Shown: positions 23,201-53,200 of the stretch, in pieces
Position numbering within the stretch: position 1 is the first letter of the stretch
How the letters are laid out: every line of letters starts with the position of its first letter
NCBI RefSeq assembly: GCF_033153115.1
Contig: NW_026889833.1
Span: forward strand, 1,178,001 to 1,242,000
Reading direction: 5' to 3'
Length of the DNA: 64,000 nucleotides
Source: Saccostrea echinata
Taxonomy: Eukaryota
Notes under the pieces: model-generated
Told to the model about the DNA's origin: nothing
Databases searched by the model: none
The model's input: only the letters and a program-made list of their open reading frames with translations
Translations under genes and position numbers: made by a program

Positions 23201-26200
23201 TATTAATACGATAATGCAGATCAATTTTACTAGGATTTTAATTCATTTTCTAAATAATATTTTTTTCCATTGAAAGCAATCTTGATTCTGGACAATATTG
23301 TACACATTGTACCAGTACCTTCTTTTTGCGGTCTTTCTTTCCTTGGTCAGTACAAGTCAGTGCCACCAGCACCACTCGGTACTTTTTGCCCGGTTTACAC
23401 TTGGTCAGCTGACAACTCTGGGCATTGGGTCCCAAACAGGAATGAAGTCTGTCATTAATTTCCAGTTTATACCCCTCTAAGTACCTCCTGAGATATTTAG
23501 GTCGTCCATCATTCTCCTTGCCAATGACCGACACCAGGGGAGGTTTTTCCCAATACAGCTGGGCAGTGGTTTGGGTGTATCCTGTGATGTATACCCTGGG
23601 GGGCTCCGTTGGAGCCCTAGTTCTAGTGAACAAAGGCTTTGACATCACGTTGGCAGTTCTGCGGTATCGTTGTATATCTTTGTCGTTTTCAGCAGATTCT
23701 AGGGAGGTTTTGATGCTGACCACTGCTTCTACTACAATCTTATATTGTGCCCCAGGGGTCAGGTCTTCAATGGTCACATTATTATCTGCAGGGTCAAGGT
23801 TGATATGGCTGGCCACATACCATTCACTATCACCTTTCTTGGAATTTTTCACATCAGACCATCTGAGAACTTGTCCAATTAACTTATTAGATCCATAAAC
23901 AATCGGTAAAAGCCAGGTCACTGAAAGTCCTGAAGTTGAAGACTCAACGATCTTCAGATTAGCGGGGGGCTCTGTTCCAGCAGTTTTGGCCATGGTGTAA
24001 GTGTTTGGCAGCCATATTGAATCATCAGCAGCAACCATTCTGTCTCTGGGAATGGAACGGACTTTCTTTAGCTTGTGCCTCTCTGGAAGTCTGTCGAAAT
24101 ATTCATCAGTAACTGCCGTGACTCGTAGGACATAGTCTGTCTTCTCTCGCAGGCCTTCAATGTCGGCCCTGCATTCATCTGGTCGTACTTCTACAGACAC
24201 ATGATGAAGGTCACTGGTGTTTATAGACTGAGCATCAATTCGGATAGCTGTAAAGTAAAATGTGCTTGTGCATTTAGAAAATTAATCCTTACATATTTTG
24301 TTACGGTCATAGCGATTACTCAAGGGCAGCTGAAATTGCTTCAGTATGTCAAAAATTTGATATATCCATGCAGTTATTAATTCACGTTTTACTAGCTAGT
24401 ACTTAGTAAAAAAAAAAAGATTAGCTTGTTTTATGCCTTTATTTGTAATGTCCATATTATTTGCCATAAGCCTATTTAATTGCAATTTCTGAAACATGTG
24501 CCATTGAGAAAAGACAGAAAACTTGTTTCTTAAAAAATTATGCTGAGACTTTTTTTTCACTTTTGATGCTCATCAGACCCATAATTCAATTGTATATGCT
24601 TCAATCATAAAATGAATGTTGCACAATTTTCTGAGTTTTTATGTCTGCAAAGGTGGCATTCTGCAATTAATTCTCAAACATTTACACACCTATTATTTCC
24701 ACTCCATGTTCTACAGGTGGATCCCAGACAAGTCTGAGGGCATTACATGTTGAGGCAGCTATCGACAGATTACTGGGCGGGTCAGGTGGGCGGGCCGTTC
24801 TCAGAGTCAGAGGTTCTGATTGGGCGGTTAGGATAAACTTGTTGGTGGTGTCATTTTCTTCTCCTTCAAAACAGAAAATTATTTACATGTATACATAAAA
24901 ATCTTTACTACTTAATAATATTAACTTGAATTTACAAAAATATTAATTCTGAAAAATCATTTTGAATGTAATTGCTTGAAACGATTGATTTTTAATCAAA
25001 TTTACTTATTCAAGAAATTCTCGACAAGAATTAACTGATACTGACCTTCGACCTTGTAATTCTCCATACGTCGTGCCTCAACGACTATGGTGTATGTTGT
25101 TGCTGGATGGAGCCCAGTGATCAGAATATGATCCTCTGAAAATCAAAAAAACAGTACATTTAATTTAACAACATAATGTTGTGTTCACTTATTTATTTAT
25201 TTTTTTATAAAAATCATAAAATTGAATTCCTCCTACCTTTAGTCTCTTCACTCTGGACATCGTTTTTATCGCCACACCACCAGGTCACTACATAATGGTC
25301 AGGACGAACAAAGTGGCCGTGTAGCTTGTCCTCTAAAAATAAAAAAATAATCAAAAACATTATAATTAACTACAAAAAAAGCCTCAACTTGTCCTGAACA
25401 AAGCAACTAAAGTTCAATCCATCAGTTTCAATAATTAAAGCTTATTTATGTTAAGCAAATACAAATTACATTTTGTTTCAATACATGGACATCATATACA
25501 AAAATTCATAAACATTGACCTCACACCCAGAACACATCAAATACATAAAGTATTAATCATAGTACTGTAACCGCTTATCTTGAACTGTATCAAATCTTCA
25601 AGTGCTCTCTGAATAATGATAGATAAAAAGATCTTCAAGCAGCCTGTAAGTTAGGGCAAAATCCAAGTATTCTTGACACACACACAATGATGAAATATGA
25701 TTGAAATTGTCAATGTATGGTCAGAGAATAAAATGGCAAATAAAATGCAGAAAAACTTTTTCAACAATGACAAAGTTCCGTTGGCAACCTTTGGCAGCAA
25801 ATTGCAAGTTATTGACAAGCATGAATAAATAAAGCATATTTCATAACTGTTCATATTAATTAAGTTAACAATGTAAGCTGATCCTTAAAAGAAGTATAAG
25901 TTTACATGATGAAAACAAAGCTCATTCAAAACCAGCTTCCATATTAGTGAATATAAAACTAAAACACAAAGCATTCGATCATCAGGTTCACCTGGGATAG
26001 GTAATTTCAGCTTATCTTGCTCATGGAGATATTGGTTAAGTTCAAAAATATCATCTATAAAAAAATCAAAAGTAAGAAACTCTAAAATGTGAATGCAATT
26101 TAAAATCATTTTTTTTGAATCTGGAAATAAAAGTAACAGAGACAAACAGTATTTCTTCTGTATCTCTCACACAACTGCCATTTTGTTAAAATGTTGTTGA

Positions 26201-47200: not shown

Positions 47201-50200
47201 ATTCATAGAAGGGGTTGAGATTATGAAAATATGCAAGGTAAATTGAATTACCTGGCCTTTGTAAGGATTTTGCAGTGTGCATATGACTTCAGTGATAAAC
47301 AATATGACAAAGTAATATTTCAACAATTGTGTATAATCTTAAATTGTGTTTTGTTAATAAATGTGCTTTACTGGCCTAATTTAGGAGTGGATGGGGATAG
47401 TTTAAGCATTGAAGCAGCTGTTTTATTGATAAACTGACAACTCACCAGTTTGTTTGAGGTCTGAGGGTTGAGTTTTTTATCCAGAGAATAGACCTCTACA
47501 TAAACCTCGTATATCCGATTTCCTGCCAGTCCAGTGATGTTAAGACTATTATTATTGGGAGGGAACATTTCACAGTACCTCACTCCATTCAGGAAAATCT
47601 GATAAAAAAAAAAAAAAAAAAAAATTAACAATCACAATAAAATTTCAATTTTTTCAATATTATCTTAAATGCTGGAATTTCTCTAGGATAACGCATTCAT
47701 AAGCATCTTTATAAAATTGGTTTGGTTCTGCAAATTTCACTGCAAGAAGGCATATACAAGTACATGTACTTTTAGCTAGCTAGGTCAAAGCTGGGTTAAG
47801 TGTACACTACAACTAAAATGTCCTTCAAACTAAGTAAACTATGCACAGCTTCATCTGAAATGCATGACAAGGTAATCAAAAACAAAGAAAAGACCGTTTA
47901 CCTGGTACCCTTTGATGAGTTTTTTCTGGATAGCATTAGGCTCCTCCCAGAAAACCTCCATGACCCCGGGGTCAGTAAAGCACGCTTTGACGGTCGGCGC
48001 ACAACTCCACCAGTCCCAATTATCATTTTTCTACATAAAAAAGGGGAGAGAACATGTCTCAGAAATTGCAGGGTTTCTTGGATATTATACTGAAAACTTT
48101 TCCCCTCAATATGCAAAACTTTAATTTTTCTTTTACAATTAAGAGGATTTTTACCTGCGGAGTCTGTCGCTTCTCCTCCTTCTGGTCACCAGATGTCTCT
48201 GTTTCTGAGGAACTTTCCTCCACCGTACCCTCTTTGGCCAAAACCCAGTATCGCCTACAATATTTATAATGAAATGGTGCATATATGGTCCTAAAGTTCA
48301 GGTAAAATAAAGGAATATGTGCTTATCAAAAAAAAAAAAGACGAAAAAATTTGTAAGTGATTTCTAACATGTCTTATTTGAATGATAAAATACTAGAATC
48401 TTAGGGTAAATTATAAGTTAATTAGCTAACAGGATTGGGAGTCATGTATGAGTCTTCTATGATTTTCTTCAAAATTACAGTGTACAATGTACAATATGAT
48501 GTACAACTCATTATCCAAATTTTAAAAAGATAATTAACATAAGCATATCTACATCTTTTGAAGAGAAATGATAATACCATGGGATTAAATTTTGTTGAAA
48601 ATGAATTTTGTAATTCATAAAAATTCAATTCCAATTAACATTATACAGTCATACCTCAATATTTCAAACTCAATGGACCAAGAAAAACTTCAAGATGTCC
48701 AAGAGATTGAGATATATTAAGGACTTTAAGCTGACTTGCACAAGTGCATGATAATCGAAATAATGATGTTTGAGACACCAATCAAAGTTTAACTGTATAT
48801 TTAAAATACATGCTTTGTCTTAACCCAAGTTACTTACTTAGAGGTAAAAATGGAACTATTGAGGAGTCCTTCCTTTACTGCCATAGCTCTTATAAAACAC
48901 AGTCCATGTTTCTTAAGAATGACACCTTTCTCTGGGTTGTATAGCTAGAGAAAAAAAAATCAAGAAACAGAAAACATTTAAAATTTTATCTTTCAGGGCC
49001 TAGATTTGCTAGGATTATAAATCTTAAAGGCAAGTCTTCATGTCTGCCATTGCCAAGCAAATCTCTCTTCTTTCCTGGAGAGTTCTTTAGTCATTGATTG
49101 CTGTATAATATCACCTATCACTTTTCCATGTAAGAAAATCTTAATCATGATCAATTTTTGCAAAATGTAACAAATGACTTATCTTATTTAATCTTTGACC
49201 TGTCTATTGATAAGAAATTTAATCAATGCAAGTTTTACCTTTGCTGATTCAATGTGAAGTTCAGGTGGGGATCCATCAGTGGTGTAGAAAATTTTGGATC
49301 CGAGTGTTTCACAGACCAGTTCTATCTTGCTGAATTGATCAACAGTTCCTCCATTCAAGGAGTTTGGAGCTACCGAAGGTTCCTTTACATGATCAGCTGA
49401 AAAAGGTGAAAAATGTAGCTCACAAATCAATCTTCTATTTACCATAAAGACAATGGATATTATATTTCTCAATCTTTCCAAAACTAGAGCTATCCCAATG
49501 AGGTAAAAAATAAAATCCCCTAAAAACCCTCAAAGAAGGCAGGAATTCAAAGTATACCCTGAAAGGGCACACTAAAATCAAGGAAAGGCAGATAATGCAG
49601 TGAAGAACACTGAAAAATTTTCAACATTTAACATCCCCTGATCATGGAACATTAATGTTGACATATGAACATGATATCTCTTCTGGTCAGAAATGCTACA
49701 GACCTGTAAGAACCTTTATAATCTCTACATTTACATATAACATAACGACTCACACAAGAATTCAGAATCCTTAAATAATTAACTTTTTTGCTAAACAGTT
49801 TACCTGCTGTGTGTCCAAGAGTGAAGAAAAAAATCTTTTAAATATGACAGTTTTTACCTCATCACAAGTAAAGATAGGATCATAATGTACTCCCCCCCCT
49901 TTCTAATCCAATTATAGCAAATATGTTTAATATATGGATCCTAGTATTTGGCTGAAATTAGTCCAGCTGTTTAAAAGAAGCTCAAATTGTTGAAAGTTTT
50001 CACACGTCTTACAGTGAGAGACAAGAACACAGATAGCAACTGGTCATCTGAAGGTTACAAAATATAGAAATATTTTACAAACTACTTTACACATAAGCTT
50101 TGAGGACTATTATGGCCCAAGATCTCTACTGCCCTGAAGAAGAACATGCACAAAGTAAGCAACTTTTGGCTTTAATATTTAAATCTATTTCATAAAACAA

Positions 50201-53200
50201 GTAAAAACACTTCAAATGTTATTATTACACTCCACAATCAATTAATTCAATGCACCAACTTCAGACACTTTTAATACATATTAAATGTTTACCATGCATG
50301 CTAATAAATCAAGCTCCATATATGCTCAATCTTTCCCTAAAAAATGCACATTAAAAGCACATCGATCACTCTGCCTTTTCCCTTAAGGCAACGTTCCAGC
50401 TTTTTTGGCATTACTCTAGATGCATGTTAGCTATCAAAAAGCTCCCAAGTATGCAAAATTTCACGCCTCTCTTACCATCCACCACAAAAACAGTACAGAT
50501 TTCATCTGGCGCCCCCTCAGACATGATAAAATACTGTCCGATCCTATCAAATGTGTGTAAAAACTCTCGATTTTTCTCCAACATGCCGCTCCGAAAACCT
50601 CGGATTCCAGTGACAATTTTTTCCTTGATTGGAACCTAATGAGATAATATGAAAGAATTTAATCATCATTTTAATATGATTTTTACCTGATGTTATGACG
50701 TGAACCGTACAGGAATATCCAGGTGCACCTTGGGAAGCCACAGTGAAACTACCGAGCTCGTCAAATGTGTAGAGGAAGCTGTTGTTTTTTACCTGTTTGC
50801 CACTGTTAAATGATTTTACACCACCAACTACATTAAGGGGTTCCTGTTGGCCAGAAATAAGCATTTAATACAATGTATACAAACAATCCTGGAAAGGCAC
50901 CATTAACTCTGTAAAGCAATTTAAAAATTTTATATATTTGCTCTGGTTTAAAAAAACAGTTTCATTGCTGTTTGACATACAAACATAAATAAATGAATCA
51001 AATTGAATTCCTTTAAAAAAAAATCAATTAAACTGTTATTTTCATTGAAATGTTGAACAGATTTTTTAATGTTTTACTACTAGTAAAGTCCCATTAGTAT
51101 TTAGGAGAAGTAGGAAAAGTACCACATGTTCTCTTATGTGGAGAGGAAAAAGTACTCAGAAAGGCTTCGAAAAATTACAAAATTTTATGAGACAGTATAA
51201 ATAATGACAAGAGTTCAGAAAATACTAAATACTTTCTAGACTAGTTAGTTTTTATTCATATCTGTAAGGGGAGGAAATGGTAAGATTCATGTCATACAAA
51301 ACAATTCTTCTTTTTTCAAAATTATAGGTTATTTGACAAATACATGTCATTTTAAACATTTAGCACCATTTCATCAGAGAAAAATATGCATGTAGCAAAT
51401 GCAAAGGCTAAAATTTGACTCAGTATTAAATGATTCAGTCAAGACTATTTCAAATTCCAGCAACCATACATATTACCAGATTAAACAATTATATAACAGT
51501 AAGAAACAGTGAATTAATCTAATACGAAATTTTCCCTTAAACTTGGCCAATGTAGGGTAACATATTTTTATGAAAGTTAATACTACATAAATTTTAATGC
51601 TAGATACTGGTTTTCCTTTGGAAGAGTGGTGGATAATAGGATAAATGATAGTATGACCATGAATAATTATCACAGACAGGACTCACTTGAGGGTTCATTC
51701 TTCCAAAACGGTCCTTGATTAAAGGATAATGCAAAACAATTAAGTAAATCTATTCTAACTACATCTTTCATGAATAGAATTCCATTAAATTAATTAATGA
51801 ATCACTACAATTTTTTTACATCTTTTGTAATACCAGTGTTTAGTACCTTGCTATCTGGAGAGGTGACATGGATGATATTGTGTTCCTCATCCGTGTTGAT
51901 CCAGGTCCATCTGACACTTTCTCCCTAATAATTAAAAACCGAATCAAAGTTTACAAGTATTCTTAAACATTTCTCATTGTACTTCTGAAATTGGTGCCTG
52001 TTAAAAGTTACCTCCCTTTAAAAAGACTAAAACACTTCGAAGGAAAATCTGAAGTCAGTTACTAACTGATAAAATGTCAGTTTCTATACAGTAAAACTCG
52101 CTTATAAGGAACTCTGATATTAGTAATTCTCAGTTATGATAAGAAGAATTCCCCATCTCTCATATCATAATATGTTCTTACAGTGAAACTCATTTAGTAT
52201 GAACATGGATATAGCAAATTCACAGATATAGTGAATTTTTTTTTATCCCACGCAAAATTCTAAACAAATCCTAGGAAAATATAACGATTATAAGTAACTC
52301 TGATATAGCAAATTTCTGGATATAGCGAACTGTTTTTGTGTCCCGTAGAGGTTAAAAATAACGAAATTACATCTTTTATAATGAATTTTCGGTATCTTAA
52401 AACTCAAATATTTATGTGGCATTATTTATCATTAGTATTAATATCTGAAATTCAATTCATCAGAAATCTTTAGAAACTTTAGGGAAAATTTTGTATTTAA
52501 TACCACCCAGTACATATTTGGTAGTCACATTTGAAGGAAAAAATGCATATTGCGAATTTTTTATACATGTATATACTTTAACTAATTCGTTATATGGATA
52601 TAACCAAATATGGAAATAGTGTTCAAAGTAAATTCACAGGTTCCTAGAACTTGGCTATAATCAAGTTTTACTGTATATGGATATTAAGTACTTTGGTTAC
52701 AAGGAACTAAAAATTTATATCTCAAGAAATTCCTAATAAGCAATTTTTACTGTATATATATTTTGATCAAAAAGACAGTCTTAAACCAGTTTTAAATACT
52801 ATAATTATAGAGTCTGTCCATACCTTCTGTACATATACAAAATGTGGATGAAATCCCTGCTGGTCGACTTTGATGACTGTGTTGTCATAGCGCTCATCAC
52901 TGATCACACTGCTAAATCTCACATCCTCCAGGTACTGAAGAAACAAATCATCTCACAAATCAAGAATAATTATACTGTTATAATGCCTTATACAGTATTT
53001 TCAATTTGGTACTGTAGATAAATTTTGTGAAAAATTAGCTCAATAGGTGAAAAAATAATGGAGTTTTAATTTCACTATAGATGCATATGCTAAGAAATTT
53101 TAAAGTCAAGAAACAGTGGTCATCATATACACTTGTGGATGCACTTAAGGAATAACTGTCTAATTTTTTGGTTTCATGATGTGATCAATCGAGTGGCTTG

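What the first reader, a model, noticed from the sequence alone, without database searches (positions are those of the whole stretch)
50476..50843. Hidden pair of tandemly duplicated, mutually exclusive exons in cupredoxin repeat 7
Exon A (50687-50843) encodes EPLNVVGGVKSFNSGKQVKNNSFLYTFDELGSFTVASQGAPGYSCTVHVITS. Exon B (50476-50635; not in the ORF track in this frame) encodes VPIKEKIVTGIRGFRSGMLEKNREFLHTFDRIGQYFIMSEGAPDEICTVFVVD. They align end to end (F.SG...FL.TFD..G...S.GAP...CTV.V). Both run phase 0 to 1 with AG/GT sites and are separated by only 51 nt. Including both shifts the frame, so they should be mutually exclusive. The swapped segment covers the C-terminal strands and loop that hold the metal ligands in true cupredoxins.
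Basis: seen in the sequence. Interest (0 to 1): 0.8.

Follow-up and report, generated by a model that had tools for sequence, protein, structure and literature searches.

The report
Two swappable exons in oyster gene
A giant oyster gene of unknown function holds two neighbouring, duplicated exons of which each messenger RNA uses only one, giving two versions of one small protein domain; this is real and conserved across oysters, but it is an ordinary kind of alternative splicing, and NCBI isoform models of other oysters already show both versions.

Summary
Exon A (50687-50843) and exon B (50476-50635) lie on the minus strand, are 157 and 160 nt long, both have AG/GT borders and both run phase 0 to 1. 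A 51-nt spacer separates them. Their peptides are 45% identical (E 2e-16), and nothing else in the window resembles either.

The interpretation also holds.
- In one RNA run of a close relative, each exon lies in its own contig that ends at the exon borders. Their depths (26 and 20.9) add up to roughly that of the shared downstream exons (51.3).
- In every RefSeq isoform I read, from Crassostrea gigas, C. angulata, C. virginica and Ostrea edulis, the protein carries either an A-type or a B-type segment at this position, never both. A partial Saccostrea model carries B.
- A Pinctada model carries a B-like segment. Mussels, clams, gastropods, annelids and a hemichordate show only A-like ones.
- Both exons are as conserved among oysters (81-91%) as the whole protein (87-90%).

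The domain folds as a cupredoxin, but both versions lack three of the four copper ligands.

Exclusivity most likely rests on the very short spacer (steric block) backed by frameshift and decay of aberrant mRNAs. That part is inferred, not shown.

I found no paper on this gene. This scan has noted similar exon pairs in other genes of this genome. New member of a known kind; modest interest.

The parts
52824..52934 (-). Constitutive exon, start of the last cupredoxin-like domain (...VIKVDQQGFHPHFVYVQK)
   Evidence: tblastn of O. edulis X1, residues 724-760, 89%. RNA contig record 4 of X5 lies on 52823-52934, and its loose end resembles the start of the next exon.
51847..51924 (-). Constitutive exon GESVRWTWINTDEEHNIIHVTSPDSK. 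Ends in phase 0 and holds the retained 'HN' histidine of the former copper site.
   Evidence: ag|...|gtacta. O. edulis residues 761-787, 96%. Aligned to plastocyanin HNIV.
51687..51713 (-). Optional 27-nt cassette exon (DRFGRMNPQ), phase 0 to 0
   Evidence: ag|...|gtgagt. Its counterpart ETQGRMNPK is present in some C. gigas and C. angulata isoforms, with either A or B.
50687..50843 (-). Exon A, 157 nt: the ancestral-type version of the C-terminal half of the domain
   Evidence: RNA contig X5 record 3 (depth 26) lies on 50687-50834 and has a 29-nt tail. 87-90% identical to the A-type of C. gigas and O. edulis isoforms.
50636..50686 (-). 51-nt spacer intron between A and B, with the pyrimidine tract and any branch point of B's acceptor
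   Evidence: The smallest ordinary intron of the gene is about 101 nt. No joint skipping these 51 nt is listed in the RNA.
50476..50635 (-). Exon B, 160 nt: the derived, highly charged version of the same half-domain
   Evidence: RNA contig X5 record 2 (depth 20.9) lies on 50476-50637 with unlaid head and tail. 98% identical to the Saccostrea cucullata model and 83-91% to the B-type of C. virginica, C. gigas and O. edulis isoforms.
50547..50549 (-). Stop codon reached inside exon B if A and B were both included
   Evidence: ORF 50547..50864 reads from A through the 51-nt spacer (a multiple of 3) into B out of frame and stops here.
49239..49396 (-). Constitutive downstream exon (A)DHVKEPSVAPNSL...IFYTTDGSPPELHIESAK, start of the CHB_HEX_C/Fn3_assoc domain
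   Evidence: Pfam PF13290 E 7e-6. RNA contig X5 record 1 (depth 51.3) starts at 49397 and is spliced on through four more exons.

Best explanation
Exons A and B are a tandemly duplicated pair of mutually exclusive exons in a roughly 46-kb, about 3,450-residue gene (window 60056-13868, minus strand). The gene encodes about seven degenerate cupredoxin-like domains, a CHB_HEX_C-type beta-sandwich, many FN3/Ig_RIMBP2-like domains and a weak, below-cut-off thioredoxin-like match. Each mRNA takes one of the two exons. The protein therefore gets one of two versions of the second half of its last cupredoxin-like domain: a long loop, the last three strands and the loop that binds copper in real cupredoxins. 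The fold is kept in both. What changes is the surface: A has 6 charged residues of 52, B has 15 of 53, with the loop ...GAPGYS... replaced by ...GAPDEI.... The duplication arose in the lineage of true oysters and pearl oysters. B then changed fast and has since been kept under the same constraint as the rest of the protein. Shown: the pair, its expression, its either/or use in relatives, its conservation and the fold. Inferred: how exclusivity is enforced. My reading is that the 51-nt spacer (62 nt in C. virginica) places B's branch point too close to A's donor for both to be used (steric block). In addition, taking both exons (stop at 50547-50549) or neither (stop after three codons of the next exon) breaks the frame, so such mRNAs would be removed by nonsense-mediated decay. 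What the switch does for the animal is unknown. The most likely role is a change of binding partner at that pole of the domain.
For: Pair and frames.
RNA (run X5, contigs of an RNA library of a relative, 90-95% alike):
- Exon B lies in a 213-nt contig laid exactly on 50476-50637.
- Exon A lies in a 177-nt contig laid on 50687-50834.
- The flanking introns have depth 0.
- Each contig has a 29-nt unlaid tail, which with the shared final G makes 30 = k-1, the overlap expected if both merge into the contig that starts at 49397.
- The depths 26 + 20.9 are roughly the 51.3 of that downstream contig.
- Raw reads are very few: about one read on B in X14 and 2-3 reads on A in each of X13 and X15.
Isoforms:
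- C. gigas X1 has B; X3-X6 have A.
- C. angulata X4 has B; six other isoforms have A.
- C. virginica X3, X6 and X9 have B.
- O. edulis X5 has A; X1-X4 have B. O. edulis X5 and X1 differ only in this segment and one distant cassette.
- The partial S. cucullata model has B.
- Of about 65 isoforms read, none has both.
Genomic adjacency elsewhere: a C. virginica ORF reads A, a 62-nt spacer and B in one frame.
Conservation: A 87-90% and B 81-91% among oysters, against 87-90% for the whole protein. The four A differences listed for X5 all fall on third codon positions.
Origin: in the tree, B plus the Pinctada B-like segment form one group (100/100), and B plus oyster A stand against all other taxa (95/83).
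Fold: PDB profile hits are plastocyanin and amicyanin. AF2 models of the O. edulis domain with A (pLDDT 83.8) and with B (81.9) have the same strand order. The top Foldseek hits are pseudoazurin and plastocyanin, E about 1e-6.
Spacer: 51 nt against about 101 nt or more for 37 other introns of the gene. Hatje et al. 2017 (PMC5740500) use a donor-to-branch-point distance under 50 bp as their criterion for steric interference.
Against: - The letters of the contigs' unlaid ends were not shown, so in the RNA the junction partners are inferred from geometry and not read.
- The RNA comes from a relative or a divergent genotype, not certainly from the window's own animal.
- Raw-read counts are too small for any tissue statement.
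- RefSeq isoforms are computed models.
- Only 15 of 51 and 15 of 58 cluster members were listed for Crassostrea and Mytilus.
The spacer length is therefore known only for this genome and, indirectly, for C. virginica.
- I do not know the shortest spliceable intron in oysters. Flies and worms splice introns of about 50-60 nt, so the steric block is not proven.
- The tree rests on 52 columns, and no A-type segment from Pinctada was available.
Confidence: 0.9

Rival explanations
1. Exon B is a dead or unused duplicate (pseudo-exon) and only A is ever spliced in.
For: B's frame was not obvious in the ORF list, where it appears only from an internal ATG.
Against: An RNA contig ends exactly at B's borders, at a depth similar to A's. 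RefSeq isoforms of five oyster species contain B. B is 81-98% conserved among oysters while the intron letters just behind it diverge (GKRGVKF / GKRRVET / GKRGVSF / GKISVDQ).
Confidence: 0.02
2. A and B are ordinary cassette exons that can both be included or both skipped, giving working proteins.
For: None found. A 51-nt intron is spliceable in some animals (my own knowledge).
Against: Both exons are 3n+1. Joint inclusion stops at 50547-50549 and joint skipping stops after three codons. No isoform of about 65 has both or neither. No joint skipping the 51 nt is listed. The depths of A and B sum to roughly the depth of the flanking exons.
Confidence: 0.03
3. The pair is mutually exclusive, but the choice and the exclusivity are set mainly by regulators or by competing RNA structures (docking and selector sites), not by the short spacer.
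For: Most human MXE clusters show no steric or splice-site incompatibility (PMC5740500). A 16-nt, 81% complementary match links B's donor region (50470-50485) with 51626-51641 (pair I18). Which exon is chosen must be regulated in any case.
Against: The inverted repeats found are short, AT-rich and at chance level, and their conservation could not be tested. The spacer is half the size of the smallest other intron and is also short (62 nt) in C. virginica.
Confidence: 0.3

Closest known systems
Mutually exclusive exons derived from tandem exon duplication, as catalogued for human by Hatje et al. 2017 (PMC5740500), with alpha-tropomyosin exons 2/3 as the classic steric case (my own knowledge)
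   Same: Adjacent homologous exons of nearly equal length and the same phase. One per transcript. They encode the same part of a fold, embedded in secondary structure. There is a frameshift if both are included, and the donor lies close to the branch point.
   Different: The host gene is an uncharacterised giant protein of lophotrochozoans and a hemichordate. The enforcing mechanism is not tested here.
Oyster alternative oxidase, duplicated exon 10 (Liu and Guo 2017, PMC5589949)
   Same: [quoted passage not shown] One copy stays close to the ancestral form and the other diverges. Both are expressed.
   Different: The AOX exons are terminal and are chosen through an alternative 3' splice site, with a stop codon in the first copy. 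The exons here are internal and truly either/or. The AOX variants have a shown stress response; no condition is known here.
Type-1 copper cupredoxins (plastocyanin, pseudoazurin, amicyanin)
   Same: The same beta-sandwich (Foldseek E about 1e-6, TM 0.56-0.61). The HN histidine motif is kept. The swapped exon covers the strands and loop that carry Cys, His and Met.
   Different: In both A and B the ligand Cys position holds Ser, the loop His position holds Ala, and the Met position holds Cys (alignment, completed by eye). A canonical copper site is absent. The domain is one of about seven in a protein whose N-terminus does not look like a signal peptide by eye; that was not tested.

Membership tests
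Mutually exclusive exon cluster (criteria of Hatje et al. 2017, PMC5740500) | Neighbouring exons with sequence similarity, similar length and the same reading frame | tested here: met
   157 and 160 nt, both phase 0 to 1, 45% identity, E 2e-16.
Mutually exclusive exon cluster (criteria of Hatje et al. 2017, PMC5740500) | Usable splice sites on both exons | tested here: met
   AG/GT with pyrimidine tracts on both. RNA contigs end at these borders.
Mutually exclusive exon cluster (criteria of Hatje et al. 2017, PMC5740500) | No transcript joining the two exons, unless the joint form is frameshifted | tested here: met
   No isoform of about 65 has both. No joint skipping the 51 nt is listed. A joint form would be frameshifted anyway.
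Mutually exclusive exon cluster (criteria of Hatje et al. 2017, PMC5740500) | Junctions from each exon to the flanking exons that bridge the other exon | tested here: inconclusive
   These junctions are explicit in the protein isoforms of relatives (SPDSK|VPI...VVD|AEHVKEP and SPDSK|EPL...ISS|AEHVKEP). In RNA they are only inferred from contig geometry (29-nt tails, k-1 overlap). Junction reads in this species were not seen.
Cupredoxin fold (plastocyanin/azurin-like) | Greek-key beta-sandwich like the solved cupredoxins | tested here: met
   AF2 pLDDT 83.8 and 81.9. The top Foldseek hits are pseudoazurin, plastocyanin, amicyanin and other cupredoxin-fold copper proteins.
Cupredoxin fold (plastocyanin/azurin-like) | Pfam family score above the curated cut-off | tested here: not met
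   Cupredoxin_1 scores 24.3 bits against a cut-off of 27 in O. edulis, over residues 736-793. The exon peptides alone give no hit. However, the A+B profile finds bacterial proteins that are strong PF00127/PF13473 members.
Type-1 blue copper protein | The four ligands His, Cys, His and Met | tested here: not met
   Only the first His (HNIIHV) is kept. The Cys position holds Ser, the second His position holds Ala and the Met position holds Cys, in both A and B (alignment, completed by eye).

The most novel reading that the evidence does not exclude
Exon B, born in the common ancestor of true oysters and pearl oysters and remade by a burst of substitutions (charged residues up from 6 to 15; loop GAPGYS changed to GAPDEI), gives the last cupredoxin-like domain a second docking face. 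That face sits at the pole where blue copper proteins meet their partners. Splicing would then switch the binding partner of a giant, probably intracellular scaffold protein between tissues or conditions, with the 51-62-nt spacer conserved as a steric lock.
Probability: 0.3. Interest if true: 0.45.

Novelty: new member of a known kind. Interest (0 to 1): 0.3.

Why it matters
It adds a clean, conserved example of exon duplication followed by either/or splicing in molluscs, where few cases have been described. The origin can be dated to a lineage, there is a visible burst-then-freeze history, and the spacer is unusually short, which makes the steric-block idea easy to test. It also marks a large, conserved, wholly uncharacterised lophotrochozoan protein whose last cupredoxin-like domain evidently matters. 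It does not change how splicing or cupredoxins are understood, and NCBI's isoform models already contain both forms.

Tried and rejected
- Pfam on the two exon peptides gave nothing.
I could therefore not read the orthologous genomic loci of other bivalves, measure their spacers, test intron motifs for conservation or compute dN/dS.
- A word search with the B-type ORF found only three close clusters.
- A paper search for six RefSeq gene ids of the orthologues found nothing.
- A search for docking/selector RNA pairing gave only short AT-rich matches at chance level.
- The sequencing-run search with the 368-nt stretch gave only small shares (0.17 or less) and very low raw-read depth. No tissue bias can be stated.
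Exons were searched apart, and the folds used natural isoform segments of Ostrea edulis.
- Rejected readings: B as the half of a further repeat (no N-terminal half lies beside it, and it sits 51 nt from A); B as a dead copy; a metal-site swap (both versions lack the ligands).

Full report
**1. The observation**

Each is bounded by AG and GT with a pyrimidine tract before the acceptor. They are 157 and 160 nt long and lie 51 nt apart. BLASTP of the two peptides gives 21 of 47 identical, E 2e-16. A tblastn of both against the whole window finds nothing else better than E 0.29. The likeness is therefore specific to this pair and is not the general likeness of the gene's repeats.

The exon before them (51847-51924, GESVRWTWINTDEEHNIIHVTSPDSK) ends in phase 0. 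The exon after them (49239-49396) needs one carried-over base, and both A and B end in the same G.

Because the spacer is a multiple of three, the ORF 50547..50864 shows directly what joint inclusion would give: B read out of frame, with a stop at 50547-50549. Skipping both exons puts the next exon out of frame, with a stop after three codons.

**2. The gene**

The Ostrea edulis X1 protein maps to window 60056-13868 (minus strand) in at least 47 blocks. Pfam on the O. edulis protein finds:
- many FN3 and Ig_RIMBP2-like domains;
- a CHB_HEX_C_1/Fn3_assoc domain directly after the A/B segment;
- weak cupredoxin matches in the N-terminal 840 residues;
- a weak thioredoxin-like match near the C-terminus.

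Full-length orthologues occur in bivalves, gastropods, annelids, a nemertean and the hemichordate Ptychodera. All are named 'uncharacterized'. I found no paper naming any of six RefSeq gene ids.

**3. Is the domain a cupredoxin?**

- A profile of A and B, run against 1.8 billion proteins, also reaches bacterial multi-cupredoxin proteins. These are strong members of PF00127 and PF13473.
- A profile of the whole domain from 22 sequences hits plastocyanin, a type-1 copper domain, nitrite reductase and amicyanin in the PDB, and little else (one unrelated weak hit).
- AlphaFold models of the O. edulis domain with A (pLDDT 83.8) and with B (81.9) have the same strand order.
- Foldseek puts the A model next to pseudoazurin, plastocyanin and amicyanin at E about 1e-6.

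The A/B exon encodes residues 65-116 of that 122-residue model. This is a long loop, the last three strands, and the loop between the last two strands, which carries Cys, His and Met in true blue copper proteins. In both A and B those positions hold Ser, Ala and Cys. Only the first histidine (HN motif, in the upstream exon) is kept (alignment, completed by eye).

A has 6 charged residues of 52 and B has 15 of 53. In the B model the last hairpin is tighter.

**4. RNA evidence**

The run search with the 368-nt stretch gave only small shares. I laid three raw-read RNA runs and one contig run (X5, an RNA library) on 47300-53200. Reads and contigs are 90-95% alike, so the RNA comes from a close relative or a divergent genotype.

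In X5:
- The introns have depth 0.
- A 713-nt contig (depth 51.3) starts at 49397 and is spliced through four further exons with GT..AG introns of 294, 583 and 124 nt among others.
- A 177-nt contig (depth 26) lies on 50687-50834.
- A 213-nt contig (depth 20.9) lies on 50476-50637.
- Each of the two exon contigs has a 29-nt tail that fits nothing nearby. With the shared final G that makes 30 letters, which is the k-1 overlap expected if both paths merge into the contig that starts at 49397.
- The two depths add up to roughly that of the common exons, as expected if each transcript holds exactly one of the two.
- No joint that skips the 51-nt spacer is listed.

Limits of this evidence:
- The letters of the loose ends were not printed, so the partners are inferred from geometry.
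- The raw runs hold only about one read on B (X14) and two or three on A (X13, X15).
- The upstream exon was too diverged to be laid. It is recognisable in a loose end at 52823.

**5. Isoforms in relatives**

A region search with the Elysia orthologue found the bivalve proteins. Cluster listings gave their isoforms. I classified the segment in each one.

| Species | B-type | A-type |
|---|---|---|
| C. gigas | X1 | X3-X6 |
| C. angulata | X4 | X1, X2, X5, X7, X9, X11 |
| C. virginica | X3, X6, X9 | none among those listed |
| O. edulis | X1-X4 | X5 |
| Saccostrea cucullata (partial model) | yes, 98% identical to the window's B | – |

- None of about 65 isoforms has both segments.
- O. edulis X5 and X1 differ only in this segment and in one distant 21-residue cassette.
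- A Pinctada imbricata model has a B-like segment (59 against 43 bits).
- Mytilus (15 isoforms read), Mya (13), unionids, gastropods, annelids, Lineus and Ptychodera have A-like segments only.
- A C. virginica genomic ORF in the Logan collection reads A, 21 codons and B in one frame. This means a 62-nt spacer and shows that the tandem layout is conserved.

**6. History and constraint**

In a maximum-likelihood tree of the 52-column segment:
- The B types including Pinctada form one group (100/100).
- B together with oyster A stands against all other taxa (95/83).
- The branch to B is long (1.4), while branches within oyster B are 0-0.07.

With annelids and the hemichordate on the other side, this places the duplication in the lineage of oysters and pearl oysters. 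A burst of change in B followed, and then a freeze.

Among oysters, A is 87-90% identical and B 81-91%. The whole protein is 87-90%. The intron letters just behind B differ freely between species while the exon does not. The four differences listed for A between the window and X5 all fall on third codon positions.

Caveats: there are few columns, no Pinctada A-type was available, and no DNA of other species could be read, so I could not compute dN/dS.

**7. How exclusivity is kept (inferred)**

- The spacer is 51 nt here and 62 nt in C. virginica. The 37 other introns I could measure in this gene are about 101 nt or longer.
- Any branch point for B's acceptor must lie within about 37 nt of A's donor.
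- Hatje et al. 2017 use under 50 bp as the criterion for steric interference, and they list frameshift with decay as a further mechanism (PMC5740500).
- Both mechanisms apply here.
- I found no convincing competing RNA structures, but their conservation could not be tested.
- What selects A or B in a given cell is unknown.

**8. Comparison and novelty**

The kind is well known: mutually exclusive exons derived from tandem exon duplication. An oyster precedent for a spliced duplicated exon exists in alternative oxidase (PMC5589949). Earlier notes of this scan report similar pairs in other genes of this genome. NCBI's isoform models of other oysters already hold both forms of this gene. I found no publication on the gene or the pair. 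I class it as a new member of a known kind, of modest interest.

**9. Steps not done**

The exons were searched apart, and natural isoform segments of relatives were used instead.

Noticed in passing
window 51687-51713 (-): A 27-nt optional cassette exon (DRFGRMNPQ; ag|...|gtgagt; phase 0 to 0) lies between the upstream exon and A/B. Its counterpart ETQGRMNPK is in some C. gigas and C. angulata isoforms, combined with either A or B.
   Followed up: partly
G000:C11:5050429-5053792 (loci L001, L003): A second copy of window 49-52 kb, 99.65% identical over 3,156 nt and with both exons intact. It is either a haplotig or a very recent duplication.
   Followed up: partly
   Followed up: partly
window 25993-26055 (-): A 21-residue cassette (DDIFELNQYLHEQDKLKLPIP-like) is present in O. 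edulis X1 and absent in X5.
   Followed up: no
protein P0019 (Logan), matches window 50687-50843: An ORF in the public protein collection reads like exon A after C-to-T conversion (P to F/L, A to V, T to I, S to F). It probably comes from an assembled bisulfite library of this or a near species.
   Followed up: no
window 52028-52618 and 53013-53200: RNA reads pile up at 90-95% likeness, with many loose ends and opposite-strand joints. This looks like a dispersed repeat inside introns, not exons.
   Followed up: no
window 50470-50485 and 51626-51641: A 16-nt, 81% complementary match between B's donor region and the intron behind the 27-nt cassette. It is at chance level for AT-rich introns and was not tested for conservation.
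   Followed up: no
window 7698-8336 (-) and 66-2717 (+): A separate RD3-domain ORF (Pfam E 2.5e-33), and ORFs that by eye look like part of a retroelement reverse transcriptase, lie beyond the 3' end of the big gene.
   Followed up: no
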